Origin: Octopus sinensis
Lineage: Eukaryota
DNA: 64,000 nt
Assembly: GCF_006345805.1 (NCBI RefSeq)
Contig: NW_021832998.1
Coordinates: 1 to 64,000, forward strand
Direction of reading: 5' to 3'
Part shown: one piece after another, positions 750-20,156 of the stretch
How positions within the stretch are numbered: the first letter of the stretch is position 1
Layout of the letters: each line of letters opens with the position of its first letter
Program-made: the position numbers and the translations under genes
The notes under the pieces: model-generated
What the model was told of the DNA's origin: nothing
Seen by the model: only the letters and a program-made list of their open reading frames with translations
The model's database searches: none

Positions 750-998
750 TTATCTTTGTATGTGTAATGTAATAGTTTAGAAAAAAAAAACCCATTGGTT
801 TCATATCTAGTGTGAACTAGACACCTCTTCAATTTTTCTAAATGATAACCAAGGAATATTTCCTGAACTATCACTGGTGTTCTTGTATTTAAAAAAAAAA
901 ACATTCTTTGCAGAGGGCAGTTATTGTTTAGAAAAACTGAAGAGATGACGAGTTCACGCTAGATATGAAACCAATAGTTTTTTCCCTAAACTATTATG

Positions 999-1005: not shown

Positions 1006-1050
<45 letters not shown>

Positions 1051-1437
1051 TTATATACTAGCTGTTGGACCTGGCATTGCTTGTGTTTACCGTGTTGAAG
1101 TTAAGCCCACCTCTAACCTTGTATTGAATAACCATTTCCTCAGAGACTATTCTATTGATGTTGTTGAAATTTTATATGTGAAAATATGCAAAAGCTGCAG
1201 GAAAAAATAACATAGTTATGGGAATTTCCACTCAAACACCTGATTGAGCTCAGAGAAATCGATGCCACCTGAGCATTTGTGAGTTTTTGAAAAATTCTGG
1301 CCTCATTTGAACTTCAGGGCATGTGATTTACCTATGTGCCAAAAATCATTAAAATCGGTTGGATGGTGTGGGAGGAGTTAGAGTAACTCCAAACACACAG
1401 ACAGACAGACAGACTCCATTACATATTTATGTGTGTG

Positions 1438-1487
<50 letters not shown>

Positions 1488-1676
1488 TATATATATATCA
1501 TCATCGTTTAATGTCCGTTTTCCATGTTGGCATGGGTTGGACGGTTCAACTGGGGTTTAGGAAGCCAGGAGGCTGCACCAGACTCCAATCTGATCTGGCT
1601 ATGTTTCTACAGCTGGATGCCTTTCCTAATGCCAACCATTCCAGAGGGGACTAGCAATATATATATATATATGTAT

Positions 1677-1984
1677 AACCGTGATCACCGTGACCGACCG
1701 GGCTATCAGATGTTGCTACCCATCGCTGGTCACAATGCGCTTCGCATTGTTTTAGCCTTCAAATGACGCCACCCCGCTGGCTAAGCGAGGAGGCCAACAG
1801 AAGAAAGTGTGAGAGAAAGTTGCGGCGAAAGAGTACAGCAGAGATCGCCACGACCCCCTGTTGGAGCCTCGTGGAGCTTTTAGGTGTTTTCGCTCAATAA
1901 AAACTCACAACATCCGGTCTGGGAATCGAAACTGCGATCCTACAACCGCGAGTCCGCTGCCCTAACCACTGGGCCATTGCGCCT

Positions 1985-1986
<2 letters not shown>
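1677..1986 (-). mobile_element. tRNA-derived SINE, family D (also 8920-9075 +, 9544-9831 -, 16471-16780 -, 23921-24095 +, 24505-24791 -, 29679-29984 -)
   Basis: Head GGAGGCGCAATGGCCCAGTGGTTAGGGCAG (A box) and TTTCGATTCCC (B box); about 310-bp conserved body in several copies. Confidence 0.85.
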
Positions 1987-2070
<84 letters not shown>

Positions 2071-2189
2071 ATCCTATATACTGACTCACTCTGACTATAT
2101 GCACTGTCTTATCCAGTCTATACACCCTGTATCTTATCCTCTTCTCTATATACGCTATTTGATATTTCTCTTTTTGTTTTTATTTCTAG

Positions 2190-2636
2190 GCAGAACCAAA
2201 ACCCCGCCTTCCTTCTAGTGATGTGAAACAACTTGGCGAAACTTTTGCATCTTGGTTTTATAAATTGTTTAACTCAGGAACTGAATCTGGTTTGAAAGAT
2301 TAGTTTTGGCCCCGATGTTCCTTACATTTACTGTTGATATCTGAAGGGATAGATGAAGAAAGGACAGAGGGTGCTGATCTGGTCGCATGTAGACTAAAAA
2401 GATTAGTGAGCAAAGAGAACTTGCATTTCAATGCCAACATCACCGGTGGTGGTGTTACGAGTCAAGGTGAGAGTTTTGGTATTGTGTGTGTTCTGGTTCG
2501 CGGTACGGTTCACAAAGGGGATCATGTCTTGGGACTTTTCGAACAGAAGTTTGATTTGCTCAGGGATCCTTTGTCAGCAAACAACTGGAAGATAGCGCAT
2601 GTTTCACTAAAAGTTTGTGGCAAAGAGTGCCATTAG
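2190..2636 (+). pseudogene. C3orf38: C3orf38-like terminal exon (copy 0; upstream exons lie before the window), in-frame TAG at 2301-2303
   Basis: Acceptor tttctag|GCA. Translation AEPKPRLPSSDVKQLGETFASWFYKLFNS..LKD*FWP..VRGTVHKGDHVLGLFEQKFDLLRDPLSANNWKIAHVSLKV matches the C3orf38 C-terminal motifs as recalled (LGEEFCHWFF, HFW, GTVH..LGIFEQ.FGL.R.P...N.WKI). Confidence 0.85.
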
Positions 2637-2989
2637 ACAACCAAGTTTCTGAGATTCTTCTGGACATGTAGAAAAAACACCAAAAAACAAAAGCAAAAAT
2701 CATTTTGTTTATGACCAAAATTGATATTATATGCAAGGAAATTATACCATATTAAAATTATCCATTGAGACTTCTAATAAATGCTTCATTGAACATCAAA
2801 CTAAATGTTTTCTGCTTTTCACATTTTCTTCTATTTCATCATCATCTTCATCATCATCATCATCATCATTTAGGCATTTACTTTTCCATGCTTGGATGGG
2901 TGACACAGAATTTGTTGAAGCAGATCAAAAATCAATGGAAATTGCAGTTGTGATACCAGTGCTGGTGGCACGTAAAAGATCCATCCGAA

Positions 2990-3262
2990 TGTGGCCGCTG
3001 CCAGCTCCGCCTTGACTGGCCTCCGTGCCGGTGGCACGTAAAAAGCACCAACCGATCATGGCCACTGCCAGCCTCCCCTGGCACGTAAAAAGCACCCACT
3101 ACACTCACGGAGTGGTTGGCGTTAGGAAGGGCATCCAGCTGTAGAAACACTGCCAGATCAGACTGGAGCCTGGTGGGTGCAGCCTCCCAGCTTCCCGACC
3201 CCGGTCGAACCGTCCAACCCGTGTTAGCATGGAAAATGGACGTTAAACGATGATGATGATGA
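2990..3262 (+). mobile_element. Retroposon family E 3' part with internal GGTGGCACGTAAAAAGCACC repeats and (ATG)n tail (also about 6860-7215 -, 12780-12935 -, 13480-13885 +, and array duplicates)
   Basis: Recurrent 3' end GGTTGGCGTTAGGAAGGGCATCCAGCTGTAGAAAC...GGACGTTAAACGATGATGATG. Confidence 0.75.
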
Positions 3263-3561
3263 GATACCTTTCCTGTTATTCACACTCACTCACCTGTTTC
3301 CAATAGAGATAATTTTTCCTCATTTCCAGATATATTTTCATGTATGTTTTGGCATGCTTTTTACAACTGGATGTCCATGTGGCTGTCCCTCTCGACATGT
3401 AGCATAAAGTGAACTCTTTCTTTACCACAGTTCTACTCAATCAAAGGGACTTTTTCCTTGTCTTCCAAGTTACTTGGAAACTTCACCAGTGATGGTACTA
3501 TGAAAAAAAAAAAATAAAAAACAAGTATCCTGTACCTTCCGTAAAGTCGGAAAGAATATCC

Positions 3562-4232
3562 GGGGCTAATGCAGCTTTGCACCTCTCTTTGAAAAATACA
3601 TTTTTTTGAAAAGTTTTTTTTGCAGATTCCTACGTTAGATGTTAGAGATTATGAATATGAAAAAAAAAAAAAAAAAAAAATTCAACTCCCCTCCAACCCC
3701 CACCCTGAAATTTAGAACTTTTTCGAAATATTTTTTCCGCTGTGTTTTAGATGATGGAGATTCCAGATATGCAAGAAACCAAGTTTTCTAAATTTTAAAT
3801 TCAATATATAGATAGGTGTATAAAGAGATAGACCTGAATGTCTTCCTGGGGCTAAAAACAACAGCAACACAGTCTTCTATAAGAGCGTCACCTTTAGTTG
3901 ACAACCCACCTCTCCTTGAAAAATGCACTTTTAAAAAAAAAAAAATTTTCTGATTCTTACGTTTTAGATATTGTAGATTACAAACGAATATGCAAAAAAA
4001 GAAATTTTCAAAATTTTACCCCCACCTAAAAATTTTGATTTTGTTTACTTTAAAGAGATCATAGTGAACTGACTAACATATGCAAATCGTAATTAAATCG
4101 AAATTAAATCCACACGAAAAAAATTTTTTTTTTGTATATTTGTAATCTCCGACATGTAAAACAGGAATCTGAAAAATATCTTTTCGAAAAAAATGCATTT
4201 TTCGAGGAGAGGTGCGAAACTGCATTAGTCCC
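3562..4232. mobile_element. Non-autonomous DNA transposon with long TIRs and 8-bp TSD (copies 18344-19015, 31620-32265)
   Basis: TIRs GGGGCTAATGCAGCTTTGCACCTCTC.. / ..GAGAGGTGCGAAACTGCATTAGTCCC, over 50 bp and imperfect. Exact TSD GAATATCC at 3554-3561 and 4233-4240. Superfamily not assigned (hAT, P and Merlin all give 8 bp). Confidence 0.85.
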
Positions 4233-5391
4233 GAATATCCAGCCACAGAAATCATACCAAAGCAGGCATTGGAGTGGGATGCTGTCAAACTGTTTCAACC
4301 CATCTAGCATAGAAGACAAACATTAAATGGTTATGATGATAATGACAACGACAACGATGATTCAACACACACACACACAATAGGCTTCATACAGTTTCTG
4401 TCTTCCAGATTGACTTAAATTACTCTTGGTTAATGCTGGAATACTGTTGGAGACACTTGCTTAAAATACTGTGCAGTAGAACTGAACCTATTTCTTTACT
4501 GCCCACAAGGGGCTAAAATCGACCCCAGTGCGTAACTGGTACTTAATTTATCGACCCCGAAAGGATGAAAGGCAAAGTCGACCTCGGCAAAATTTGAACT
4601 CAGAACGCAACGGCAGACGAAATACAGCTGAGCATTTCGTCCGGCGTGCTAACAATTCTGCCAGCTCACCTCCTTAGTAGAACCGAACCTGAGACCATCT
4701 GGTTGAGAAGTTAATTTCTTAATAGCGTCGCCACGTCTAAACACCGAGAACAGGTGAATCCAAGCAAGATTGTGGATGGAACTAACTTTTCCCGACAGAG
4801 TCTCATATTCTTTTATGCTTCTGTTCGTTTCAGTATCAAATCTGATACATATTCTATCAGTTTCTTTTTTGCCAAACTGCTAAGTCATGGAAATGTAGAG
4901 AAACTCACGCTGGTTGAGTCAAAAATATATATATATATATATATCAACCATTTTATGCTGCCACCGTCGTCATCATCATCATCATCATCATTTTAATGTC
5001 TTCTTTTCCTTGCTTGCATGGATCAGACGGAATTTATTGAGGAAGATTTTCTAAGTCACATGTTGTTCCTGTCATCAACCTTCATTTATTTTCAAGCAAG
5101 GTAGTATTTCCCGACGGCCTGATATGTTTTTGTGGAGGCTGTGTGGTAAGAAGCTTGCTTCCAAACCACACGGTTCCGGGGTCAGTCCCACTGCGTGGCA
5201 CCTCGGGCAAGTGTCTTCTACTATAGCTGTGAGTGGATTTGGTAGACGAAAACTGAAAGAAGCCCGTCGTGTATGTATGTATATATATATATATATATAT
5301 AGGGAGAGTTCACGAAAAAAACAAAAGACGAAGACAGGTGGTGTAGAAAACAAACAGATGTATTAGTATAACGCTCAGGAATAGAAAAAGT

Positions 5392-5427
5392 CTTTTACGT
5401 TTCAAGCCTATGCTCTTCTACAGAAAG
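5392..5427 (-). ncRNA. Variant minimal hammerhead motif with CUGUAGA core (copies 20312-20347; related CUGUUGA copy 48741-48775)
   Basis: Minus strand reads CTTT CTGTAGA A GAGC atag GCTT GAAA C GTA AAAG: stem I CTTT/AAAG, stem II GAGC/GCTT, non-consensus U at core position 6. Confidence 0.45.
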
Positions 5428-6231
5428 GGACTCAGAAAAAAAATGTGTAGTGGCCACCGATCTATCACGGAGATTATATATATATGTATATATTTGTGCG
5501 TCTGTGTTTGTCTCCCACCATCGCGTGACAACCGACGTTGGTGTGTTTACATTCCCGTAGCTTAGCTGTTGGGCAAAAGAGACCGATAGAATAAGTACCA
5601 GGCTTACAAAGAATAAGTCGTGGGGTCGATTCCTTCGACTAAAAGGCGGTGCTCCAGCATGGCCGCAGTCAAATGACTGAAACAGGTAAAAGAAAAGCAA
5701 AAGAACAATGTATGAAGCCGAGACAGATGTACTAACATCACGTCATGCAACAAGCTTCTGCTGATAAATATCTAAGGGAAATAATTCAATATTAATATGC
5801 AATTAGTTATGTCCCTTACAAAATCCTTTTTCGATTTCCGTTTATTCTTTTTAGTCGTGGCATCTCAATGCTCAAATGTACTTTATTTTATCGACCAGGA
5901 AAGGACGAACGGTAAAGTCGATTCAGCGGAATTTGAACTTAGAAGATAGAGAGCCAGAAGATATTCCAGCAAGGTGCCACTGCAAGGCACGTACCAGCTC
6001 GTCTTCAAACTTGTAATAATGGTTTCTGATATAGACACATACGCGACTGTTTTGAGGAGAGGGCAGGTGATATAATCGATCTCAGTATCGATCAGGAAGG
6101 AACTAAATATAAATTCGATCTCGGCGGGATTTGAACTTAGAACGTTAAGAATCAGAACAAATACTGCAAAGTTACTGTTATCCAAAAGGCACGTTTCCAC
6201 ATGCATCTATTGTGTTATATTCACTTCTAAG

Positions 6232-6470
6232 ACGAGCTGGCAGAAAGGTTAGCACGCCGGGCGAAATGCGTAGCCGTATTTCGTCTGTCTTTACGTTCTG
6301 AGTTCAAATTCCGCCGAGGTCGACTTTGCCTTTCATCCTTTCGGGGTCGATTAAATAAGTACCAGTTACGCACTGGGGTCGATGTAATCGACTTAATCCG
6401 TTTGTCTGTCCTTGTTTGTCCTCTCTGTGTTTAGCCACTTGTGGGTAGTAAAGAAATAGGTATTTATAAA
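6232..6470 (+). mobile_element. tRNA-derived SINE, family A (more than 25 full or partial copies in the window on both strands)
   Basis: A box GGCGAGCTGGCAG, B box GAGTTCAAATTCC, conserved core GCCGAGGTCGACTTTGCCTTTCATCCTTTCGGGGTCGAT. Confidence 0.9.
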
Positions 6471-7745
6471 TAACTCCGCCATCTCGGCATCAACTTCAAA
6501 CTTTTAATAATAATAATGGACAGAAAGCTGCGAGTTGGCAGAACCGTAAGCACGCCAGGCGAAATGCGTAGCCGTATATCGTCTGCCGTTACGTTCTGAG
6601 TTCAAATTCCGCCGAGGTCGACTTTGCCTTTCATCCTCCTTCGGAGTGGATTAAATAAGTACCAGTTACGCACACTGGTAGATATAATCGACTTAATCCG
6701 TTTGTCTGTCCTTGTTTCTCCCCTTGTGTGCGCGTGACGGGCTTCTTTTAGTTTCCGTCTACCAAATCCCACTTTGGTCGGCCTGAGCCTGTAGTAGAAG
6801 ATACTTGCTCAAGGTGCCACGCAAAGTGAAACTGAACTCAGAATCAAGCATCTCACCACATCATCATCATCATTTAACGTCCGTTTTCCATGCTGGTATG
6901 GGTTGGATGGTTTGACTGAGGACTGGAAAACCAGGAGGCCGCACAAGGCTCCAATCCGATCTGGCAATGTTTCTACAGCTGGATGCCCTTCCTAACACCA
7001 ACCATTCCGATATTGTAGTGGGTGCTTTTTACGTGCCACCGACACAGGAGCTAGTCAGGCGGCACTAGCATCGGTCACGTTCGGATGGTACTTTTGACGT
7101 GTCACTGGCACAGGAGCAAGTCGGAGTGGGGTACTGGCATCGACGACGTTCGGATGGTGCGTTTTACGTGACAGCGGCACGGGGAGCCAGTCTCGCGGCA
7201 CTGACAACGACCCACGCATGAATACTTACAATTTCCATTTTTGATTTCGAAATTGTTTCAAACACAACACGAAGGAAGAAGAATTATATGGATGCAACGG
7301 CCAATCTGCAGTTTCGTTAATAAAGAGCAGCGAGCGAAACATTGCCATTATTAATTCGTGATCAGCAAAAAAAGCAGAATTAACTTTAAATAGAAACACC
7401 TGTTTACCATATTTTTTGTGTAGATACATAGTGAAAGGGCAAATTTACTGTTGTGTTCATCCGGAGATAGTCTCTCATATGCACTCGCTGTGTTAGTAAG
7501 CACAATATATATATATTTCTTTACTACCCACCAGGGGGCTAAACACAGAGAGGACAAACAAGGACAGACAAAGGGATTAAGTCGATTACATCGACCCCAG
7601 TGCGTAACTGGTACTTAATTTATCGACCCCGATAGAATAAGTACTGGGCTTACAAAGAATAAGTCCCGAGGTCGATTTGCTCGACTAAGGCGGTGCTCCA
7701 GCATGGTCGCAGTCAAATGACTGAGACAAGTAAAAAAAATATATA

Positions 7746-8143
7746 TCTCTATATATAAAAGAGAGGTTGTGTGTCTGTCTCCTACGATTTAGATTCCTAA
7801 CTACTCCCACATTTTGCGGTGCAGTTTAACCAAATCCGGGTATCTTATAGTCGTGATTCATATCGAGCCCTTCTGGGTATTAGCGCGCGGCTACGATGAG
7901 TCTACGATTTAAAAAATAATTTACCATCATTTTTTCCCGTTTTAATCCATCTTTTCGCTATTATATAAGGGAAGTAACTCTCTAAAAATGTCTACGATGA
8001 GTCAACGATTTAAAAAAAAATTTACCATAATTTTTTTTCCATTTTTAGTGCATTTTTTTGCTACTTTTTGGCTATAAATCTCTAAAAATGCTTATATAGT
8101 TATTTCCCTTACAAACCCGAGCAACGCCGGGCGATACTGCACG
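7746..8143 (+). mobile_element. Non-autonomous Helitron (duplicate 22747-23143)
   Basis: 5' TC start and subterminal hairpin CCCGAGCAACGCCGGG; terminal CTAG is mutated to CACG. Same family as 37420 and 49439. Confidence 0.7.
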
Positions 8144-8599
8144 TAAGCGAAAGCAGGATATTGCCGTCGCTCGTCTCTGTCTGTCTGTTCTCAAAATCAC
8201 TGAAAAACGACAGAATGGATTTTCGTCAAATTTAGCAGAAATGCTCATTGGGTGAGTGGCTCGAATTCATTGTTTTGGCTTGAATTTTTTCAAAATTGGC
8301 GGACAAGTGAATCAAAATGTTTTTTTCCCGACCTTTGTCACAAATACATAAATGATAAGCAGGGGAAATAACTCTTGATGTAATTTTGTTGAAAAATGAA
8401 TTCGTCTGAGAATATATTAAGTGAAATTATATTTTATTTTGTCCTTGTGTGAGCGTCGGGTATGCATCGCCCCTCCAATGCCTTTTTGTTCGTTCCTTTT
8501 TATATCCCCTTGGAGCATTCAGGGAGGGTTAGTATCTTGTGAGTGGGGCTAGTCGCTAGTATGGACCCCATACTGTTGACACATCAAATAGCTGGAACA

Positions 8600-9480
8600 A
8601 TCTCAGACAAGGACACTGCACGGGATGATGGGCATTTGCTGGAAGGACAGTGTGACGAATCAAGAAGTACTGAGTCAATGTTGCTGAAGGCTCAGCGACG
8701 CTGGACTGGCCATGTCATCAGAATGACTGACAACCGTGTTACCCAGGCAGCTGTTGTGTGTTGAGCTCATGCAGGGCTCATGCAAAATGAGGAAAACCTA
8801 AACCGAGGTACAAAGACACTTTGAAAAGTAACCTCAAATGGAGAAGCATTGGAGCAGATGAGCTTGAGGCCTCTGCTGTCGACAGATCAGTCTCTCATCT
8901 CATGAGCAGCAGCTGCCGTGGAGGCACAATGGCCCAATGGTTAGGGCAGCGGACTCGCGGTTTCGATTCCCAGACTAAGCGTTGTGTGTGTTTATTGAGC
9001 GAAAATACGTAAAGCTCCACGAGGCTCTGGAAGGGGGTGGTGGTGACCCCTGTTGTACTCTTTCGCCACAACTTTCTCCCTGTTTCTTGTCCCCGACTTC
9101 CTACGCAACCGCTGAGCCTGGATGTGCATTCATCCATCCGTCAATGCTCTCGGTGTCGGGGGTTAACCTGCTTTCTCTTCTGCGGGTCTTACGAATAGCA
9201 AAGGACCACGTTTCGGACTTCTCCCATCTTGCGAGCTCTGGGACGAAGACCGTTCGCTCAACTGCAACAGCAGCAGCTGCCTTTGAAGAGGATCGGTAAC
9301 AGAATCTTGATGCTGCAAGAAAACGACATCACAGGGCAGTATCTGCCTCAATCAAGTCAACAGACTATTGCTGTGACATCCGTGGGCGCCAGTGTGCCTC
9401 CAGATTTGTACTGCAGGGTCATGACCACTCTCATTGCTGAGAACACAGACTTTGTCATCATCAGGCACTGATGGACTACC
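8600..9480 (+). mobile_element. RTE-clade LINE 3' remnant interrupted by a family-D SINE head (duplicate about 23600-24440)
   Basis: Translations LLKAQRRWTGHVIRMTDNR, PRYKDTLKSNLKW and AAAFEEDR..YCCDIRGRQCASRFVLQGH match the RTE post-RT region and C-terminal zinc-finger-like motif. Confidence 0.8.
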
Positions 9481-9830
9481 TATTATATGTATATGTGTGT
9501 ATGTGTATATATATATATTATGTGTGTGTGTGTATATATATATATCACCGTGACCGACCAGGCTATCAGATGTTGCTACACATCGCTGGTCACAATGCGC
9601 TTCGCATTGTTTTAGCCTTCAAATGACGCCACCCTGCTGGCTAAGCGAGCAGGCCAACAGAAGAAAGAGTGAGAGAAAGTTGTGGCGAAAGAGTACAGCA
9701 GGGTTCGCCACCACCCCCTGCCGGAACCTCGTGGGGCTTTAGGTATTTTCGCTCAATAAACACTCACAATGCCCCGTCTGGGAATCGAAACCGCGATCCT
9801 GCTGCCCTAACCACTGGGCCATTGCGCCTC

Positions 9831-9862
<32 letters not shown>

Positions 9863-9869
9863 CATACAT

Positions 9870-10372
9870 GCGTAACTGGTATTTATTTAATCGACCCCGA
9901 AAGGATGAAAGGCAAAGTCGACCTCGGCGGAATTTGAACTCAGAACGTAACGGCAGACGAAATACCTATTTCTTTTACTACCCACAAGGGGCTAAACAAA
10001 GAGGGGACAAACAAGGACAGACAAACGGATTCAGTCGATTACATCGACCCCAGTGCGTAACTGGTACTTAATTTTTCGACCCCGAATGGATGAAAGGCAA
10101 AGTCCACCTCGGCGGAATTTGAACTCAGAACGTAACGGCAGACGAAATACTTATTTCTTTACTACCCACAAGGGGCTAAACACAGAGCGGACAAACACGG
10201 ACAGACAAACGGATTCAGTCGATTACATCGACCCCAGTGCGTAACTTGTACTTATTTAATCGACCCTGAAAGGATGAAAAGCAAAGTTGAACTCGGCGGT
10301 ATTTGAACTCAGGACGTAGTGGTAGACGAAATAGCGCTAAGCATTTCGCCCGGTGCGCTAACGATTCTGCCA
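9870..10372 (-). mobile_element. Family-A SINE concatemer (about 3 units)
   Basis: An approximately 190-bp unit repeated head-to-tail through a conserved TATTTCGTCTG junction. Confidence 0.85.
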
Positions 10373-10417
10373 CTCCTCCTGCCTTTGGTCCGAGATGTTT
10401 TCTTCAACCTAAACGAT

Positions 10418-10495
10418 GCCACCTGGTGGCTAACGCAATCTTAAATCTTGAGTTACCTCCACTTACCAACCATTTTCTTGGAAATATTTCCGGGT
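10418..10495. promoter_or_regulatory. Putative proximal promoter: CTCF-like palindrome GCCACCTGGTGGC (10418-10430) and ETS-like ATTTCCGGGT (10486-10495)
   Basis: Motif match only, 60-140 bp upstream of the ATG. Both are present upstream of copy 2 (GTCACCTGGTGGC at 25193-25205, ETS motif unchanged). Confidence 0.3.
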
Positions 10496-10555
10496 GTATT
10501 TGCTTTCACTTTGGATTGTTGCCGTTTCTCAGTTGAAGGAATTCAAAGACCAGCA

Positions 10556-10679
10556 ATGAATTTCACAGAAGCGGAGAAAAAAGATTGCTGTAATCTACTA
10601 AACCAATTAGATGACGAAGTCATTCTGTCGCTGACGAACACAGTCACCGGGAGATCCATCCAGGTCTCCAGTCGAAAAA
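10556..10679 (+). CDS. C3orf38: C3orf38-like copy 1, coding exon 1 (MNFTEAEKKDCCNLLNQLDDEVILSLTNTVTGRSIQVSSRK)
   Basis: ATG at 10556; donor A|GTAAAA at 10680 (phase 1) is compatible with the exon-2 acceptor. Resembles the C3orf38 N-terminus (GCRNLL..DTVT). Confidence 0.8.
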
Positions 10680-10962
10680 GTAAAAGAAGATTCTCTTTAT
10701 TTACATTTTACTTCCAAAACTCTCAGGCTTCGTCTTATCTTGTCTTATCGTCAGAGGATCAGGGACCTGGGGGAAATAATGATAATAATTATAATAATAA
10801 TAATAATTATTATTATTGCACTCTAAACGTTTTATTTATTGGAAGTTAAATTGTATTTCCGGTTATAGAGTGGCGAATGGGTTCGAATCCGTTGAGCGCT
10901 TAATCGGTCTCCAATGACCGAGTGTTGTATATATAGTGTGTGTGCGTGTATATATATTATAT

Positions 10963-11016
<54 letters not shown>

Positions 11017-11110
11017 TACCATGTGTACTTCGTAAACACCAGTCGTTTTTTTTTCTCCATCTCTTGTTGCCCACTTTGGGATCTTTCTTTCCTCTCTCTT
11101 CCTTCTTTAT

Positions 11111-11145
11111 GTTTCCGACGACGAGCTCCGCTCGAAACGTCATAC
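11111..11145 (+). ncRNA. Degenerate hammerhead motif in a Penelope-like fragment
   Basis: GTTT CCGACGA C GAGC tcc GCTC GAAA C GTC ATAC; core U4>C and one stem-I mismatch. Confidence 0.35.
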
Positions 11146-11315
11146 CTTCATGCTTCCATTTTTCCTGAGCGCCTATATTAATATAATACTGTAATTGTTC
11201 CACGTGTTGTTGTTTTTCTGTTTTCCCGTTGGATTAAAATTATACATATATATATATACATATATATATAATATTATATATACACATATATATATATACA
11301 TATATATACATATAT

Positions 11316-11619
11316 AATAATATTAATTAGAGACAAAACCACTATTTTGCAAAACAAACAAGGAAAGACTTAATCAATACATAAAATTTTAAAAAAGTAA
11401 AAAAAAACGCCACTACAATTGTTTCATGTCTTCTAATGACAATCTTCATAAATTGAAACTGATTTGAAAATCGGAAATCCACCTGAAGATTGTCATTTGA
11501 AGACATGAAACAATTGTAGTGGCGGCTTTTTTTACTTTTTATTAAAATTTTATGTATTGATTAAGTCTTTCCTTGTTTGTTTTGCAAAATAGTGGTTTTG
11601 TCTTTAATTAATATTATAT
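11316..11619. mobile_element. Penelope-like inverted repeat (arms about 133 bp, 35-nt spacer), present only in unit 1
   Basis: 11316-11448 is the near-perfect reverse complement of 11484-11619. Absent from the matching intron at about 25740-25860. Confidence 0.75.
11479..11522 (+). ncRNA. Minimal type-I hammerhead ribozyme motif
   Basis: CCAC CTGAAGA T TGTC atttgaa GACA T GAAA CAATTG TA GTGG: stem I CCAC/GTGG, palindromic stem III ACAATTGT, GUA cleavage triplet. Confidence 0.65.
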
Positions 11620-11697
11620 AATATTTTACTATAAAATTGGATTTAATCCTAAATCTGATTTTTCCCTGTAATTTTGGATTTATTCCCTAATATTTAT

Positions 11698-11781
<84 letters not shown>

Positions 11782-13122
11782 TAGATATATATATACATAG
11801 ATATATATATATATAAGTGAATGCGTGTGCGTGTTGCTTGTAAGGTATTGGCGAAAAACTACGGTTATACAGAATTTGTTTATGTCATTTATGAAGCAGC
11901 CGTTTGGATGATTGATAACATATTTCTTTCGTTATTTTATCGCATCTGTCCACCTTTCTTTCGTTATTTTACCGCATTTTTTGCCCCCAACAAATTCCTA
12001 TATAATCAAAACCTACATTGTCTGAAGCATAACCGAGCTTTCGTTTTGGCATAGGCGAAGAAACAAAGCCGATATGGGAATTTTTCGAAACTCCGCTCCC
12101 CTCTGTTCGGAAAACTTTTTCCCAAACAAATTCCGATATAATCGGAATCTACACCGTATTAAGAATATATGTAGAGAGTTTTATTAAAAAATATCCATTC
12201 TTCTGAAAGTTACGAGGAAACAAATTGCAGGGGGCACACTTGTGTAGGAATGCCTACAAAGTGTGTGGAGTTGCCGTCGGAGATTTGGCTGTTATTTCTA
12301 GCATGTGAAAGCCTGTTTAATGCGCAGAGTGTAACGAAAGGGTTTAAAAACATCCGTACATTCGCGACAGGTTACTGTGTTTTTTTTTTTTTTTTTTGAA
12401 ATAATTGAAATTAAAAATAAATTCTGCTGTTTCGTTTTAACTCGCAAAGTTGTCAACTGTTTTGTTCTTCAATTTCCATGAAAATCTTTTATTTATTTAC
12501 TTTCGTTTTAAAGTGAAGAGAGGAGGGTGCGGTGGGGGTCGGGGAAATTAAGTTTTGAAAGGCAAATTTATTTACAAATTCGTAATCTCCGTAGCTGAAA
12601 ATGTGGGTTTCTGTAAAAAAAAAACAAGTGGGGTGTGGCCAAGCGTGAATGCCTTACACTAACTGCTAGGCTATGCATCCTATAATATATGGCATGGAAT
12701 TTATGTGGAAAAATATATTGGTTTCAATTTTTCCATTGTATGTATCCACCAAATTTTCATTCCTGCCTCTGTACATCATCATCATCATCGTTTAACGTCC
12801 GTTTCCCATGCTCGCACGGGTTGGAATGTTCGACCGGGGTCTGGTAAGCCATGGAGGCTGCACCAGGCTCCAGTCTGATTTGGCAGTGTTTCTACTACTG
12901 GATGCCCTTCCTAACGCCAACCACTCCGAGAGTGTAGTCATTTGCACATTAGACTTTTACGCCTTTACCATACAGCTTTACAGTCCTTACTCAAATACAA
13001 GAGCCTGCATATGGTCATTTAACCCACTAGATGTAACAGCTAAATCTCCCTCAAATTACATCCTACTTTCTTGACAAAGTTTGACACATTGGATTATGTT
13101 GTCCCAGATATGCAGTAGTTAA

Positions 13123-13342
13123 CCCTTTCGTTACCATATTTATTTTGAGATGCTCTGCATTTCTTTCAATTGTTTTAAATATAACAAAGAATTTAGTAAA
13201 ATACTTAGTTATCATTCAGCTAGTGTTAGGGACATAAATTGCGACTAAGGTTTGGTGGAAGATTTTAATTCAAAACTTATGCAAACAAGACATTTGTACT
13301 ACAGAACCAGAGCTGGTTTCAGCCGGGTTGGTAACAAAAGGG
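13123..13342. mobile_element. piggyBac-type MITE (duplicate 27234-27454)
   Basis: TIRs CCCTTTCGTTACCA / TGGTAACAAAAGGG, flanked by TTAA at 13119-13122 and 13343-13346. Confidence 0.8.
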
Positions 13343-14047
13343 TTAAGCTAAGTTTAGGATGGTCATGATGAGCACTTTTGATTGTTATCTACTGAATTGA
13401 GTCTGGTATGAATCTAACCAACATTACTTACATGACCTTCACCCATGGACTCTGCTGCCAGTTGAGGCAAGTGAAATCGAGGTCAAAATCAAACTCGGTG
13501 ACTGGCATCCGTTGCTAGTGGAGCGCTAAGAGTACCATTCGAGTGTGATCGTTACCGTGTCGTCTTACTAACACTTGTGCTAGTGGCATTTGAAACATTT
13601 GAGCAAAGGTGTCACCAGTGCCGCTGGACTGGCTCCTGTGCAGGTGGCACATAAAAAGCACCATTTGGGCGTGGCCGTTGCCAGTACCACCAAACTGGCC
13701 CCCGTGCCGGTGGCACGTAAAAGCACCCACTACACTCTCGGAGTGGTTGGCGTCAAGAAGGGCATCCAGCTGTAGAAACTCTGCCAGATCAAGATGGAGT
13801 CTGGTGCAGCCATCTGGTTCTCCAGACCTCAGTCAAATCGTCCAACCCGTGCTAGCATGGAAAGCGGACATTAAATGATGATGAAACCCTTTGTTGTCTA
13901 AGATATAACAATTTCAGGTTCCTTTCTACTCTCAGATATAAGAATTTATTCATTATCTATACTGGTAACAAAAAATAAAGAATGAATACGAACAATTTTT
14001 CTGTAATTAACGCAAATGTGATTTATTTATTTTTGTTTCCATTGCAG

Positions 14048-14271
14048 AAGCTATTGATGCCATCCTCTCGTTTTCTATGTCAGCGAGAGAACTTTTGAAC
14101 CGAAAGAAAATCACACGAGATTACCTGAAGCAGTATCTTCTCAGTCAAAAAGTTTCAGTGTCTGGTAATTCAACAAAACAGGATTTAATTTCTCGAATTT
14201 TAGAATATTGGTCTGGAGAAAGGATTTCTTATCCTGCAGTCCAATCCCCACCCAGGGAGCAAACCCATTTG
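14048..14271 (+). CDS. C3orf38: C3orf38-like copy 1, exon 2 (AIDAILSFSMSARELLNRKKITRDYLKQYLLSQ...EYWSGE...QTHL)
   Basis: Pyrimidine tract plus ttgcag|AA acceptor (phase 1); TTG|GTAATT donor (phase 0). Matches the recalled [26 protein letters not shown]..YW segment. Confidence 0.85.
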
Positions 14272-15273
14272 GTAATTTTCTGACCTTTTCTTTTTTAAAC
14301 TTTTCTCTAACTTTGGATGAAGATCAGCAATTTTCAGGAGAGGGCTAAGTCAATTACATTAACCCCAGCGCTCCATTGGTAATTATTTTATTGACCTTGT
14401 GAGGCAAAGTTAGCCTCAGTGGCTTAGCATTTTGTCTGGTACATTGACAGTTCCATCAGCTCTCTATCTTCCTTCTTTTTTAAATGATTGACTGTCAGCT
14501 ACCTAATCAAGACATCCTACCTCCTAAACTCTACGAGATACTTCAATTCATCAAACTATTTATGAGTTCCCCCAGAGTTTTGCAAGCTGTCCCTGGCACT
14601 AGATCCGTTTCACCCTTGATCCATCTAAGACAGCTAAGCACATGACTTTAATGTGTTTCTTTTACATCCCATACACAACAAAACTACATAACAGCCCCAA
14701 TTTTCCAGGTGCTCCACACACAGGTGTGATATTACCTGTACTAGTGAACAGCAATACCTAGAGGAAAGTCCTGACTGTCACCAACTGGATGGTATTTACC
14801 CAGTTTTAAAATACCTTCAAAACTGCCATCTGCAAAGCAAACATCTTGCAAATTCTTTCCTCTCCTGAAATTCATTTGGTCTTTTTGACCCAGAAACAGA
14901 AGATTATCCACCATCTTTGTAGAATTCTCCTATGCTTTTAATTTCCAATGAAGATGGCACTGTAAGCAGTGCTCACATTTGTGCAGGAAACATTTGCACT
15001 TGCTGTCACTTTTTTTTTACAGCTCTGTAATTCACACTCCTTGCAATTACTCATCGAAAACTTCCTCTTTTCAGTCAAATATCATGTGTTCAGCATTGTC
15101 CTACCTACAATATATAACTTTCTCAACTTGACTGGGTACACTGTGTCTCATTCTCACTCTCTCTCTCTCTACATACATACATACATACAAACATACATGT
15201 GTACATACATACATATATACATACACACATGTGAGTCCACTGCCCTAACCACTGGGCCATTGCACCTCCCATA

Positions 15274-15307
<34 letters not shown>

Positions 15308-15354
15308 CATCATCATCATTTAATGTCCGTTTATATGCTAGCATGGGTTGGACG

Positions 15355-15393
<39 letters not shown>

Positions 15394-15797
15394 GAAAGTT
15401 TACGAAAATAAACAAAAGACGAAGGCAGGTGGAGTATAAACAAACAAATGTATTAGTATAGCGCTCAGGAATAGAAAAAGTCTTTTATATATACATATTG
15501 TTACAATATCATAAATCAGAAGATACCTATAAAATATAGAGTAGTTGTTTATTTTTGTATATGTAATGTAATAGTTTAGAAAAAAAAAACCCATTGGTTT
15601 CATATCTAGTGTGAACTAGACACCTCTTCAATTTTTCTAAATGATAACCAAGGAATATTTCCTGAACTATCACTGGTGTTCTTGTATTTAAAAAAAAAAA
15701 CATTCTTTGCAGAGGGCAGTTATTGTTTAGAAAAACTGAAGAGATGACGAGTTCACGCTAGATATGAAACCAATAGTTTTTTCCCTAAACTATTATG

Positions 15798-15843
<46 letters not shown>

Positions 15844-16233
15844 TTATATACTAGCTGTTGGACCTGGCATTGCTTGTGTTTACCGTGTTGAAGTTAAGCC
15901 CACCTCTAACCTTGTATTGAATAACCATTTCCTCAGAGACTATTCTATTGATGTTGTTGAAATTTTATATGTAAAAATATGCAAAAGCTCCAGGAAAAAA
16001 TAACATAGTTATGTGAATTTCCACTCAAACACCTGATTGAGCTCAGAGAAATCGATGCCACCTGAGCATTTGTGAGTTTTTGAAAAATTCTGGCCTCATT
16101 TGAACTTCAGGGCATGTGATTTACCTATGTGCCGAAAATCATTAAAATCGGTTGGATGGTGTGGGAGGGGTTAGAGTAACTCCAAACACACAGACAGACA
16201 GACAGACTCCATTACATATTTATGTGTGTGTGA

Positions 16234-16264
<31 letters not shown>

Positions 16265-16800
16265 GATACACACACACACATATACATATCATTATCATCG
16301 TTTAACATCCGTTTTCCATGTTGGCATGGGTTGGACGGTTCAACTGGGGTTTAGGAAGCCAGGAGGCTGCACCGGACTCCAATCTGATCTGGCTATGTTT
16401 CTACAGCTGGATGCCTTTCCTAATGCCAACCATTCCAGAGGGGACTAGCAATATATATATATATATGTATAACCGTGATCACCGTGACCGACCGGGCTAT
16501 CAGATGTTGCTACCCATCGCTGGTCACAATGCGCTTCGCATTGTTTTAGCCTTCAAATGACGCCACCCCGCTGGCTAAGCGAGGAGGCCAACAGAAGAAA
16601 GTGTGAGAGAAAGTTGCGGCGAAAGAGTACAGCAGAGATCGCCACCACCCCCTGTTGGAGCCTCGTGGAGCTTTTAGGTGTTTTCGCTCAATAAACACTC
16701 ACAACGTCCGGTCTGGGAATCGAAACTGCGATCCTACAACCGCGAGTCCGCTGCCCTAACCACTGGGCCATTGCGCCTCCACACACACACACACACACAC

Positions 16801-16852
<52 letters not shown>

Positions 16853-16971
16853 ATCCTATATACTGACTCACTCTGACTATATGCACTGTCTTATCCAGTC
16901 TATACACCCTGTATCTTATCCTCTTCTCTATATACGCTATTTGATATTTCTCTTTTTGTTTTTATTTCTAG

Positions 16972-17418
16972 GCAGAACCAAAACCCCGCCTTCCTTCTAG
17001 TGATGTGAAACAACTTGGCGAAACTTTTGCATCTTGGTTTTATAAATTGTTTAACTCAGGAACTGAATCTGGTTTGAAAGATTAGTTTTGGCCCCGATGT
17101 TCCTTACATTTACTGTTGATATCTGAAGGGATAGACGAAGAAAGGACAGAGGGTGCTGATCTGGTCGCATGTAGACTAAAAAGATTAGTGAGCAAAGAGA
17201 ACTTGCATTTCAATGCCAACATCACCGGTGGTGGTGTTACGAGTCAAGGTGAGAGTTTTGGTATTGTGTGTGTTCTGGTTCGCGGTACGGTTCACAAAGG
17301 GGATCATGTCTTGGGACTTTTCGAACAGAAGTTTGATTTGCTCAGGGATCCTTCGTCAGCAAACAACTGGAAGATAGCGCATGTTTCACTAAAAGTTTGT
17401 GGCAAAGAGTGCCATTAG
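16972..17418 (+). pseudogene. C3orf38: C3orf38-like copy 1, exon 3 with in-frame TAG at 17083-17085 (153-aa product if terminated there, 264 aa if read through)
   Basis: Same acceptor and frame as 2190-2636, with only two substitutions seen between them. Phase 0 fits the exon-2 donor. Confidence 0.85.
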
Positions 17419-19171
17419 ACAACCAAGTTTCTGAGATTCTTCTGGACATGTAGAAAAAACACCAAAAAACAAAAGCAAAAATCATTTTGTTTATGACTAA
17501 AATTGATATTATATGCAAGGAAATTATTCCATATTAAAATTATCCATTGAGACTTCTAATAAATGCTTCATTGAACATCAAACTAAATGTTTTCTGCTTT
17601 TCACATTTTCTTCTATTTCATCATCATCTTCATCATCATCATCATCATCATTTAGGCATTTACTTTTCCATGCTTGGATGGGTGACACAGAATTTGTTGA
17701 AGCAGATCAAAAATCAATGGAAATTGCAGTTGTGATACCAGTGCTGGTGGCACGTAAAAGATCCATCCGAACGTGGCCGCTGCCAGCTCCGCCTTGACTG
17801 GCCTCCGTGCCGGTGGCACGTAAAAAGCACCAACCGATCATGGCCACTGCCAGCCTCCCCTGGCACGTAAAAAGCACCCACTACACTCACGGAGTGGTTG
17901 GCGTTAGGAAGGGCATCCAGCTGTAGAAACACTGCCAGATCAGACTGGAGCCTGGTGGGTGCAGCCTCCCAGCTTCCCGACCCCGGTCGAACCGTCCAAC
18001 CCGTGTTAGCATGGAAAATGGACGTTAAACGATGATGATGATGAGATACCTTTCCTGTTATTCACACTCACTCACCTGTTTCCAATAGAGATAATTTTTC
18101 CTCATTTCCAGATATATTTTCATGTATGTTTTGGCATGCTTTTTACAACTGGATGTCCATGTGGCTGTCCCTCTCGACATGTAGCATAAAGTGAACTCTT
18201 TCTTTACCACAGTTCTACTCAATCAAAGGGACTTTTTCCTTGTCTTCCAAGTTACTTGGAAACTTCACCAGTGATGGTACTATGAAAAAAAAAAAATAAA
18301 AAACAAGTATCCTGTACCTTCCGTAAAGTCGGAAAGAATATCCGGGGCTAATGCAGCTTTGCACCTCTCTTTGAAAAATACATTTTTTTGAAAAGTTTTT
18401 TTTGCAGATTCCTACGTTAGATGTTAGAGATTATGAATATGAAAAAAAAAAAAAAAAAATTCAACTCCCCTCCAACCCCCACCCTGAAATTTAGAACTTT
18501 TTCGAAATATTTTTTCCGCTGTGTTTTAGATGATGGAGATTCCAGATATGCAAGAAACCAAGTTTTCTAAATTTTAAATTCAATATGCATATAGATAGGT
18601 GTATAAAGAGATAGACCTGAATGTCTTCCTGGGGCTAAAAACAACAGCAACACAGTCTTCTATAAGAGCGTCACCTTTAGTTGACAACCCACCTCTCCTT
18701 GAAAAATGCACTTTTAAAAAAAAAAAAATTTTCTGATTCTTACGTTTTAGATATTGTAGATTACAAACGAATATGCAAAAAAAGAAATTTTCAAAATTTT
18801 ACCCCCACCTAAAAATTTTGATTTTGTTTACTTTAAAGAGATCATAGTGAACTGACTAACATATGCAAATCGTAATTAAATCGAAATTAAATCCACACGA
18901 AAAAAATTTTTTTTTTGTATATTTGTAATCTCCGACATGTAAAACAGGAATCTGAAAAATATCTTTTCGAAAAAAATGCATTTTTCGAGGAGAGGTGCGA
19001 AACTGCATTAGTCCCGAATATCCAGCCACAGAAATCATACCAAAGCAGGCATTGGAGTGGGATGCTGTCCTCCAGCTCTTCTTTGGATCCTGTCAGACTG
19101 TTTCAACCCATCTAGCATAGAAGACAAACATTAAATGGTTATGATGATAATGACAACGACGACGATGATTC

Positions 19172-19203
<32 letters not shown>

Positions 19204-20156
19204 AGGCTTCATACAGTTTCTGTCTTCCAGATTGACTTAAATTACTCTTGGTTAATGCTGGAATACTGTTGGAGACACTTGCTTAAAATACTGTGCAGTG
19301 GAACTGAACCTATTTCTTTACTGCCCACAAGGGGCTAAACACAGAGGAGACAAACAAGGACAGACAAACGGATTAAGTCGATTATATCGACCCCAGTGTG
19401 TAACTGGTACTTAATTTATCGACCCCGAAAGGATGAAAGGCAAAGTCGACCTCGGCAAAATTTGAACTCAGACAAAATAACGGCAGACAAAATACAGCTA
19501 AGCACTTCGTCCGGCGTGCTAACGATTCTGCCAGCTCACCACCTTTGTGGAACCGAACCTGAGACCATCTGGTTGAGAAGTTAATTTCTTAATAGCGTCG
19601 CCACGTCTAAACACCGAGAACAGGTGAATCCAAGCAAGATTGTGGATGGAACTAACTTTTCCCGACAGAGTCTCATATTCTTTTATGCTTCTGTTCGTTT
19701 TATGCTTCTGTTCGTTTCAGTATCAAATCTGATACATATTCTATCAGTTTCTTTTTTGCCAAACTGCTAAGTCATGGAAATGTAGAGAAACTCACGCTGG
19801 TTGAGTCAAAAATATATATATATATATATCAACCATTTTATGCTGCCACCGTCGTCATCATCATCATCATCATCATTTTAATGTCTTCTTTTCCTTGCTT
19901 GCATGGATCAGACGGAATTTATTGAGGAAGATTTTCTAAGTCACATGTTGTTCCTGTCATCAACCTTCATTTATTTTCAAGCAAGGTAGTATTTCCCGAC
20001 GGCCTGATATGTTTTTGTGGAGGCTGTGTGGTAAGAAGCTTGCTTCGAAACCACACGGTTCCGGGGTCAGTCCCACTGCGTGGCACCTCGGGCAAGTGTC
20101 TTCTACTATAGCTGTGAGTGGATTTGGTAGACGAAAACTGAAAGAAGCCCGTCGTG

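What the first reader, a model, noticed from the sequence alone, without database searches (positions are those of the whole stretch)
10300..10700. Island of divergence over promoter and exon 1 in otherwise near-identical units; exon-2 changes are all non-synonymous
Seen, counted by eye against 25090-25480: about 22 substitutions plus a 3-nt indel in the 124-nt exon 1, mostly amino-acid changing, and roughly 12% divergence in the 250 bp upstream. Exon 2 has 6 differences, all non-synonymous (R/S, N/S, K/Q, Q/K, L/F, N/S). Exon 3 differs at only 2 of 447 nt between copies 0 and 1. Inference: concerted evolution homogenises the unit while the 5' regulatory and N-terminal block escapes or is diversified, the pattern of a variable-N-terminus gene family. 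The alternative is a conversion tract from an older paralog.
Basis: partly seen in the sequence, partly recalled or inferred. Interest (0 to 1): 0.72.

Follow-up and report, generated by a model that had tools for sequence, protein, structure and literature searches.

The report
Old-paralog patch in octopus gene array
The divergent patch is real, but it is best read as an old sequence lineage left or copied into one unit of a recombining tandem array of truncated octopus C3orf38-like genes, with no sign of selection for a variable protein end.

Summary
The window is Octopus sinensis contig VCDQ01002170.1. It carries about 2.3 tandem units of 14.1-14.8 kb, each with a three-exon C3orf38-like gene (Pfam DUF4518). 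Units 0 and 1 differ by 2.1% overall. Across 10233-10790 they differ by 12.4%: exon 1 has 26 of 124 nt plus a 3-nt indel, and the 250 bp upstream differ by 11.2%. The maximum 400-column count is 58; no permutation exceeded 24.

Exon 1 has dN/dS of about 0.65. The six exon-2 changes are all non-synonymous, but that is unremarkable (P=0.21), and exon 2 is not above background (P=0.17).

Against five other copies and O. bimaculoides, gene B is the odd one out in the island. It lies 11-13% from every copy and branches deepest. The relative-rate test is not significant (21 vs 13). Gene B shares short blocks of variants with different paralogs, and PHI gives P<0.0005. Part of the "divergence" is structural: a 184-bp repeat-unit deletion and a 21-nt tandem duplication at the splice donor.

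All three exon 3 copies in the window carry an in-frame TAG (Gln154 to stop). Gene B's exon 3 is also frameshifted in this assembly.

Verdict: an ordinary gene-conversion mosaic in a decaying array.

The parts
1..14804 (+). Tandem unit 0 of the array. It carries the orphan exon 3 of the upstream gene and exons 1-2 of gene A.
   Evidence: Self-BLAST and MAFFT against unit 1.
14805..28912 (+). Tandem unit 1. It carries exon 3 of gene A and exons 1-2 of gene B. It is the positional ortholog of the last full unit in O. vulgaris.
28913..33331 (+). Partial unit 2, carrying exon 3 of gene B. The array ends at about 33331, and the unique flank from 33778 matches the O. vulgaris flank.
10233..10790 (+). 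Divergence island 1 in unit 0 coordinates, equivalent to 25007-25589 in unit 1. It has 67 of 539 substitutions (12.4%) and gene B is the odd copy.
10556..10679 (+). Gene A exon 1 (124 nt, phase 1). It encodes MNFTEAEKKDCCNLLNQLDDEVILSLTNTVTGRSIQVSSRK and belongs to XP_029655866.1.
14048..14271 (+). Gene A exon 2 (224 nt), the SAP-like segment. It has 5 gene-A-private non-synonymous changes between 14088 and 14168.
16972..17418 (+). Gene A exon 3 (447 nt), with the premature in-frame TAG at 17083-17085.
25332..25458 (+). Gene B exon 1 (127 nt). It encodes MSFTEAEKKGCRNLLNQLYYKDILSLVDTVTRRFIEDKRSRE and belongs to XP_036355197.1.
28156..28379 (+). Gene B exon 2. It is 98.7% identical to exon 2 of the O. 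vulgaris last unit.
30267..30705 (+). Gene B exon 3. It has the same TAG plus 7 small frameshifting indels and an extra TAG. The indels may be assembly errors.
2190..2636 (+). Orphan exon 3 of the gene whose exons 1-2 lie off the contig start. Its TAG is at 2301-2303.
9869..10333 (+). A 184-bp SINE-like tandem repeat with 2.5 copies here and 1.5 copies at 24827-25108 in unit 1. Gene B's last copy is a copy-2/copy-3 hybrid, so the left 100 nt of the island compares non-equivalent repeat copies.
25445..25493 (+). A 21-nt tandem duplication (2.3 copies) across the gene B exon 1 3' end and splice donor. It accounts for the 3-nt indel, the cluster of differences at 10661-10669, and the 24 extra nt after the donor.
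10949..11815 (+). (TA)n-bounded segment of intron 1 present in unit 0 and in O. vulgaris. About 750 bp of it are missing from unit 1 (25747-25867). It forms the right-hand structural boundary of the island.
13930..14168 (+). Divergence island 2, where gene A is the odd copy. It is a 60-nt complex replacement in intron 1 (13930-13989) followed by the 5 private exon-2 changes.

Best explanation
The window holds the distal part of a young tandem array of C3orf38-like (DUF4518: SAP-like plus NTF2-like) genes in Octopus sinensis. The units exchange sequence by interlocus gene conversion and unequal crossing-over. Each unit is therefore a mosaic of segments of very different ages: about 0%, about 2%, and about 12%.

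The island over the 5' flank and exon 1 is one such segment. Unit 1 (gene B) carries a tract from a deep paralog lineage. That tract was either retained there while its surroundings were overwritten, or copied in from an unsampled unit. In either case one conversion event since the split from O. vulgaris is needed.

The tract lies between two repeat-mediated rearrangements, a 184-bp repeat-unit deletion and a deletion of about 750 bp bounded by (TA)n. It was further altered by a 21-nt tandem duplication at the splice donor.

The amino-acid changes are what unconstrained sequence gives. The genes are truncated by a shared nonsense codon. Gene A and gene B encode at most the first 148 and 134 of 271 domain positions, and they evolve at roughly neutral dN/dS.

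Shown: the island, the mosaic, the odd-copy assignment, the structural events, the stop codon, and the dN/dS values. Inferred: gene conversion as the mechanism, the age of the B lineage, and the role of the flanking heterologies in limiting exchange.
For: Identity and context:
- O. sinensis XP_029655866.1 and XP_036355197.1 are encoded on this 68,675-bp contig.
- DUF4518 hits have E=5e-29 and 2e-28.
- An intact 274-aa paralog sits on chromosome CM016870.1, next to a 100-N gap.

Size of the island:
- 12.4% against a 1.66% background.

Which copy is odd:
- Gene B is 11.2-13.2% from sinA, sin1, vulL1, vulL2a and vulL2b across the island.
- Gene A is 3.1-3.5% from vulL2b and vulL1.
- In the three-way comparison there are 41 unit-1-odd sites against 8 unit-0-odd sites in 10320-10719.

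Age of the B lineage:
- With O. bimaculoides as outgroup there are 21 B-derived and 13 A-derived changes (P=0.23). Gene B is 26.3% from O. bimaculoides and gene A is 23.9%.
- Neighbour-joining places gene B outside all other copies (62% bootstrap) and joins gene A with vulL2b (99%).

Mosaicism:
- Gene B shares 10 informative sites with sin1 and vulL2a, 5 with vulL2a alone, and 4 with vulL2b alone.
- 33% of site pairs in the island are incompatible.
- PHI P<0.0005 over 8460-11370.

Homogenisation:
- Units 0 and 1 are 0% apart over 3073-4294, 4697-5107 and 12686-13085.
- Unit 1 equals its O. vulgaris positional ortholog to within 0.2-1% in other segments.

No sign of selection:
- Exon 1 has pS 0.27 and pN 0.18.
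- Exons 1 and 2 together have 7 synonymous changes of 31, against a 22.7% neutral expectation (P=1.0).

Structural components and truncation:
- Structural events.
- TAG and frameshifts.
Against: - No donor carrying the B-type tract was found. About 25-35 of gene B's island variants are private to it.
- Inside exon 1 the changes are lopsided: 14 B-derived against 5 A-derived.
- They are concentrated in the 3' half, 22 of 71 nt against 4 of 53 nt. Exon 1 is more diverged than its non-coding flanks (21% vs 9.5%, P=0.002; P=0.07 after removing the duplicated part). Some lineage-specific acceleration or complex mutation in gene B is therefore likely in addition.
- Bootstrap for the deep position of gene B is only 62%.
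- Only two exon 1 copies exist on this contig, and only six in total were available.
- Identical stretches could be partly produced by assembly polishing.
Confidence: 0.65

Rival explanations
1. Diversifying selection keeps the promoter and the N-terminal exon different between paralogs while the rest of the unit is homogenised. This is the variable-N-terminus family the reader proposed.
For: - Exon 1 is the most divergent exon among all paralog pairs, at 3-22%, and peaks above its flanks.
- Exon 2 of gene A has 5 private changes, all non-synonymous.
- Exon 3 between gene A and the intact paralog has 24 non-synonymous changes against 2 synonymous (one-sided P=0.047, uncorrected).
- The ortholog pair sin1 and vulL2a keeps its exon 1 at only 1.6% divergence.
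Against: - Exon 1 dN/dS is 0.45-0.99 in all paralog pairs that have synonymous changes, and 0.3-0.46 against O. bimaculoides.
- Synonymous divergence in exon 1 is itself 27%.
- The non-coding 5' flank and intron are 7.5-11% diverged.
- Both genes are truncated by a TAG, and the family here has only a handful of members.
Confidence: 0.1
2. The island arose in place. Gene B is a dead copy that suffered a burst of local mutation, through error-prone break repair, slippage or multi-nucleotide events, with no old lineage involved.
For: - Many gene-B-private changes are tightly clustered, with 17 in 10609-10669.
- There is a 21-nt tandem duplication at the donor, and repeat-mediated deletions lie on both sides.
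- A patch of 15 small indels lies elsewhere in the same copy.
Against: - 13 of 34 polarised differences are derived on the A side.
- Gene B keeps states shared with O. bimaculoides and with sin1, vulL2a and vulL2b in separate blocks.
- The mutation spectrum is mixed, with no strand-coordinated pattern.
Confidence: 0.12
3. Assembly artefact. The unplaced contig is a chimera or a mis-polished collapse of several units, or the two 'units' mix haplotypes. Both the identical stretches and the islands would then be partly technical.
For: - The contig is unplaced, and the chromosome has a 100-N gap at the matching position.
- A patch of about 1 kb has 15 one-to-two-bp indels, mostly homopolymer deletions, which looks like unpolished long-read sequence.
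Against: - The independent O. vulgaris assembly shows the same kind of mosaic, for example vulL1 and vulL2b at 0.0% over about 700 bp.
- It also carries gene-B-type variants in short blocks.
- The differences in the island are substitutions, not indels.
Confidence: 0.08

Closest known systems
C3orf38 / DUF4518 (Pfam PF15008) family
   Same: The exon 1-2 product matches profile positions 2-98 (E=5e-29) and the exon 3 product matches positions 164-269 (E=2e-28). The intact O. sinensis paralog XP_029643593.1 covers positions 3-268 of 271 (E=1.5e-72).
   Different: Genes A and B stop at profile positions 148 and 134 because of a CAG-to-TAG change, plus frameshifts in gene B. They are tandemly multiplied in O. 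sinensis and O. vulgaris, whereas the 27-kb O. bimaculoides locus fetched shows one copy.
Tandem gene arrays evolving by interlocus gene conversion (concerted evolution with mosaic tracts), as reviewed in PMC3924818
   Same: There are head-to-tail units, patches of identity between paralogs that differ from the ortholog, phylogenetic incompatibility, and short blocks shared between different paralogs.
   Different: No donor for the gene B tract was identified, so direction and tract ends are inferred. The array members appear non-functional or truncated.
   Same: Exon 1 and its 5' flank are the most divergent part of the unit, and each paralog has its own exon 1 sequence.
   Different: There is no excess of non-synonymous change. 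Synonymous and non-coding sites are equally diverged, there are few copies, and the reading frames are truncated.

Membership tests
DUF4518 / C3orf38 (PF15008) | A Pfam profile match above the gathering score of 27 bits. | tested here: met
   101.7 and 99.8 bits for the two parts of gene A. P0001 scores 132.1 bits and P0007 scores 101.7 bits.
DUF4518 / C3orf38 (PF15008) | A full-length domain of about 270 profile positions in one reading frame. | tested here: not met
   Gene A ends at profile position 148 of 271 and gene B at 134 of 271, because of the in-frame TAG at 17083-17085 and the frameshifts. The intact relatives P0008 and P0006 cover positions 2-269.
DUF4518 / C3orf38 (PF15008) | A SAP-type helix-extended-helix motif in the exon 2 product. 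| tested here: inconclusive
   The SAP profile PF02037 scores 17.9-18.5 bits, below its 23.9-bit cut-off.
Tandem array under concerted evolution by gene conversion | Head-to-tail repeated units each carrying the gene. | tested here: met
   The units are 14.8 kb and 14.1 kb, followed by a partial third unit.
Tandem array under concerted evolution by gene conversion | Segments where paralogs within a species are more alike than positional orthologs. | tested here: met
   Units 0 and 1 are 0-0.8% apart over 2267-4294, where both are 1.5-8.8% from O. vulgaris. The reverse pattern is seen elsewhere.
Tandem array under concerted evolution by gene conversion | A statistical signal of recombination among the copies. 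| tested here: met
   PHI-type permutation gives P<0.0005, and 3302 of 12720 site pairs fail the four-gamete test.
Tandem array under concerted evolution by gene conversion | An identified donor copy for the divergent tract. | not testable with these tools
   Two O. vulgaris units (OX597825.1, about 6,065,287-6,084,341) and the O. sinensis units in the assembly gap could not be fetched.
Variable-N-terminus family under diversifying selection | dN/dS above 1 in the variable exon. | tested here: not met
   The Nei-Gojobori ratio is 0.68 for gene A against gene B, 0.45-0.99 for the other paralog pairs that have synonymous changes, and 0.32-0.46 against O. bimaculoides.
Variable-N-terminus family under diversifying selection | Intact, translatable paralogs. 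| tested here: not met
   A premature TAG is present in all three exon 3 copies of the window.
Variable-N-terminus family under diversifying selection | Paralog-specific expression. | not testable with these tools
   No transcript data were available.

The most novel reading that the evidence does not exclude
The truncated copies are not dead. Each unit keeps its own promoter-plus-exon-1 cassette, protected from homogenisation. The shared UAG, an ideal ADAR triplet, would be recoded to UGG (Trp) by cephalopod A-to-I editing. The array would then yield either SAP-only or full-length proteins with unit-specific N-termini. The excess of non-synonymous change in exons 2-3 would then reflect adaptive divergence rather than decay.
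Probability: 0.06. Interest if true: 0.65.

Novelty: new member of a known kind. Interest (0 to 1): 0.25.

Why it matters
The case shows how a striking "island of divergence with only amino-acid changes" can arise without selection. The ingredients are an old tract inside a recombining array, repeat-register shifts, a small tandem duplication, and relaxed constraint after a nonsense mutation.

It also places an unplaced O. sinensis contig next to an assembly gap on chromosome CM016870.1. It flags two annotated "C3orf38 homolog" models as truncated copies.

Beyond that it is an ordinary example of mosaic paralog evolution. It would matter more only if the truncated copies proved to be expressed and recoded.

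Tried and rejected
- **Positive selection.** Nei-Gojobori counts per exon for all 21 pairs of seven copies were never significantly above 1. Exon 1 was consistently below 1.
- **Hypermutation in gene B.** The relative-rate test against O. bimaculoides was not significant overall, and the spectrum was mixed.
- **A donor inside the window or the fetched loci.** BLAST of all exons and of the island found only the known copies, none closer than 11% to gene B.
- **Fetching the missing O. vulgaris units.** The 624-aa fused gene model that spans them is not in the protein collection, so its locus could not be requested.
- **Fetching sequence upstream of the window.** The contig starts at window position 1.
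- **"All three islands sit on exons".** I dropped this. A wider scan showed the small-indel patch in unit 2 covers about 1 kb and is not confined to exon 3.
- **PHI within the island alone.** Not significant (P=0.24) because incompatibility is already saturated there.
- **tRNA scan of the SINE-like repeats.** It found nothing.
- **Literature searches.** They found no cephalopod-specific work on C3orf38 or on this array.

Full report
**What the window is**

A protein search with the spliced product of the three exons returned Octopus sinensis XP_029655866.1 (153 aa, 99% identical) and XP_036355197.1 (177 aa). Both lie on one 68,675-bp contig. A look-up showed that the contig is VCDQ01002170.1 and that window coordinates equal contig coordinates.

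Self-comparison shows a tandem array:
- unit 0 is 1-14804;
- unit 1 is 14805-28912;
- a partial unit 2 is 28913-33331, after which unique sequence follows.

Each unit carries a three-exon gene whose product matches Pfam DUF4518, the C3orf38 family. Exons 1-2 give E=5e-29 and exon 3 gives E=2e-28. There is also a sub-threshold SAP motif in exon 2.

| Gene | Exon 1 | Exon 2 | Exon 3 |
|---|---|---|---|
| Gene A | 10556-10679 | 14048-14271 | 16972-17418 |
| Gene B | 25332-25458 | 28156-28379 | 30267-30705 |
| Upstream gene | off the contig | off the contig | 2190-2636 |

These models rest.

**The observation**

Units 0 and 1 differ by 2.1% in substitutions overall. Counts by segment are below:

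| Segment | Differences | Comment |
|---|---|---|
| Finding range 10300-10700 | 55/401 (13.7%) | binomial P=1e-32 |
| Exon 1 | 26/124 plus a 3-nt indel | reader said about 22 |
| 250 bp upstream | 28/250 (11.2%) | reader said about 12% |
| Start of intron 1 | 7.5% | |
| Exon 3 (2190-2636 vs 16972-17418) | 2/447 | |

The densest 400-column window has 58 differences, against a permutation maximum of 24.

Three qualifications apply:
- The units are a patchwork of 0% to 4%, not uniformly near-identical.
- Exon 2 at 2.7% is not above background (P=0.17).

**Relatives used**

I fetched four loci:
- the last O. vulgaris unit, vulL1, in L001;
- the first O. vulgaris unit, vulL2a, and the start of the second, vulL2b, in L002;
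- the O. bimaculoides gene in L003, with one copy in the 27 kb fetched;
- an intact 274-aa O. sinensis paralog, sin1, on chromosome CM016870.1 in L004.

The unique flank after the array in the window (33778 onward) matches the flank after the last O. vulgaris unit. Gene B is therefore the positional ortholog of vulL1. In the O. sinensis chromosome the first unit is followed by a 100-N gap. The sequence after the gap matches none of the fetched loci. The window contig probably belongs in that gap.

**Which copy is odd, and how old is the difference**

Across the island (10311-10800), distances are as follows:
- gene A is 3.1% from vulL2b and 3.5% from vulL1;
- gene B is 11.2-13.2% from every copy, including its positional ortholog and sin1.

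In a three-way comparison of unit 0, unit 1 and the O. vulgaris unit, 41 sites in 10320-10719 are odd in unit 1 and 8 are odd in unit 0.

With O. bimaculoides as outgroup, 21 differences are derived in gene B and 13 in gene A (P=0.23). Gene B is 26.3% from the outgroup and gene A is 23.9%. A neighbour-joining tree puts gene B outside all other copies (62% bootstrap) and joins gene A with vulL2b (99%).

Orthologous divergence between the two species is 0.2-1.0% in undisturbed segments. The island is more than ten times older than the speciation. It is about half the distance to O. bimaculoides.

**Mosaic signal**

Gene B's variants are shared in separate short blocks:
- 10 informative sites with sin1 plus vulL2a;
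- 5 with vulL2a alone (10392-10393, 10443-10444, 10753);
- 4 with vulL2b alone (10514-10524).

A third of site pairs in the island fail the four-gamete test. Over 8460-11370 a PHI-type permutation gives P<0.0005.

Elsewhere, units 0 and 1 are identical over 3073-4294, 4697-5107 and 12686-13085 while differing from O. vulgaris. In other segments unit 1 equals O. vulgaris and unit 0 is odd. This is the expected footprint of repeated interlocus gene conversion. The general properties of such tracts are reviewed in PMC3924818.

B-type variants occur in O. vulgaris copies. The B lineage therefore predates the species split.

**Structural contributions to the "divergence"**

- Upstream of exon 1 lies a 184-bp SINE-like tandem repeat, with 2.5 copies in unit 0 and 1.5 in unit 1. 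Gene B's last copy has the states of copies 1/2 for its first 98 nt or so, and only then joins the unique 3' part. The left 100 nt of the island therefore compare non-equivalent repeat copies after an unequal exchange.
- At the 3' end of gene B's exon 1, a 21-nt unit containing the splice-donor motif is present 2.3 times (25445-25493). This explains the 3-nt indel, seven differences within 10661-10669, and 24 extra nt after the donor.
- To the right, about 750 bp between (TA)n tracts are missing from unit 1.

The island is thus bracketed by heterologies. These are known to limit heteroduplex extension. Their role here is my inference.

**Selection**

For exon 1, gene A against gene B gives 7.3 synonymous and 17.7 non-synonymous differences: pS 0.27, pN 0.18, ratio 0.68. 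Across all seven copies the ratio is 0.45-0.99 between paralogs that have synonymous changes, and 0.32-0.46 against O. bimaculoides.

For exon 2, six of six non-synonymous changes has P=0.21 under neutrality. Exons 1 and 2 together have 7 synonymous changes of 31, equal to the neutral expectation.

Exon 1 is more diverged than its flanks (21% vs 9.5%, P=0.002). After removing the duplicated 3' end this becomes P=0.07. The changes sit in the 3' half of the exon, 22 of 71 nt. Within the exon the B lineage has 14 derived changes against 5. Some extra change in gene B is therefore likely, but it affects synonymous sites as well.

Synonymous divergence from O. bimaculoides is higher in exon 1 than in exon 2 (P=0.014). 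This points to a regional rate or constraint difference, not to protein-level selection.

**State of the genes**

All three exon 3 copies in the window, and the last O. vulgaris unit, have TAG where sin1, vulL2a and another O. vulgaris copy have CAG (Gln). The annotated products therefore cover only 148 and 134 of the 271 profile positions. The intact paralog covers positions 3-268.

Downstream of the TAG the frame stays open in gene A. It differs from sin1 by 16 non-synonymous and 2 synonymous changes. Across the whole exon the counts are 24 against 2 (one-sided P=0.047, uncorrected). By my reading of the sequences printed, many of these fall at residues that sin1 shares with O. bimaculoides. 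This fits loss of constraint.

Gene B's exon 3 has seven small frameshifting indels and a second TAG. These belong to a patch of about 1 kb with 15 one-to-two-bp indels, mostly homopolymer deletions. The next 1.9 kb have only one. They may therefore be assembly errors.

**The second island**

At 13930-14168, gene A is the odd copy, with 22 unit-0-odd sites and 0 unit-1-odd sites. The island consists of a 60-nt complex replacement in the intron plus five private non-synonymous changes in exon 2.

Three of gene A's states match Argonauta or O. bimaculoides residues: N and K in "LLNRKK", and N in "GNS". This is a weak hint that this too is an old variant. Its positional ortholog in O. vulgaris lies in the stretch I could not fetch.

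**Conclusion**

The island is real and highly non-random. The best account is a deep-lineage tract in a gene-conversion mosaic, sharpened by repeat-mediated rearrangements and a local duplication, in copies that are truncated and evolve about neutrally.

Whether the tract was retained or imported cannot be decided without the missing units. The reading of a selected variable N-terminus is not supported. Its own refutation criterion, dN/dS at or below 1 with grouping to an old paralog, is largely met.

**Comparison with what is known**

The genes are members of DUF4518/C3orf38 by profile score but fail the full-length criterion. The array behaves like known tandem families under interlocus conversion.

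Literature searches found nothing on C3orf38 in cephalopods or on this array. The genes themselves are already annotated in NCBI.

Noticed in passing
window 17083-17085, 2301-2303, and about 30375 within gene B exon 3; L001 exon 3 at 15413-15859: A shared in-frame TAG (CAG to TAG, Gln154 to stop) is present in every exon 3 of the window and in the last O. vulgaris unit. In gene A, the orphan exon 3 and the O. vulgaris copy, the 110 codons after it remain open; in gene B's exon 3 they do not (see the indel patch below). UAG is a favoured ADAR context, and editing could not be tested here.
   Followed up: partly
window about 29640-30750 (unit 1 equivalents 16433-17462): A patch of about 1 kb has 15 unit-2-private 1-2-bp indels, mostly homopolymer deletions, and only 9 substitutions. 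The next 1.9 kb have one such indel. This is either unpolished assembly or a mutagenic repair tract. It causes the gene B exon 3 frameshifts.
   Followed up: partly
window 13930-13989 vs 28058-28097: A 60-nt intronic segment in gene A replaces an unrelated 40-nt segment that is shared by gene B and two O. vulgaris copies. It is a complex replacement 60 nt upstream of exon 2.
   Followed up: partly
window 10418-10430: A 13-nt palindrome, GCCACCTGGTGGC, lies 138 nt upstream of the start codon inside a block conserved to O. bimaculoides. Gene B carries a C-to-T change in it at the position equivalent to 10419. It may be a promoter element.
   Followed up: no
L004 22610-22709 (O. sinensis CM016870.1): A 100-N assembly gap lies directly after the first, intact unit of the array. 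The window contig starts mid-unit and ends in the downstream flank, so it probably fills this gap.
   Followed up: partly
L001 1566-2007 (O. vulgaris): The exon 3 of the second-to-last O. vulgaris unit is about 10% diverged from all the others and keeps CAG. That lineage is absent from the O. sinensis window. Its unsampled exons 1-2 are candidate sources for the islands.
   Followed up: no
window 59601-60010 (- strand): A decayed mariner/Tc1-type transposase remnant. It scores DDE_3 E=1e-4 and Transposase_1 E=1.3e-4, both below the Pfam cut-offs.
   Followed up: partly
window 38914-39412 and 46174-46571 (- strand), and 9869-10375: Dispersed copies of the same SINE-like element that forms the 184-bp tandem repeat upstream of exon 1 (84-87% identical). 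ARAGORN finds no tRNA-like gene in the window.
   Followed up: partly
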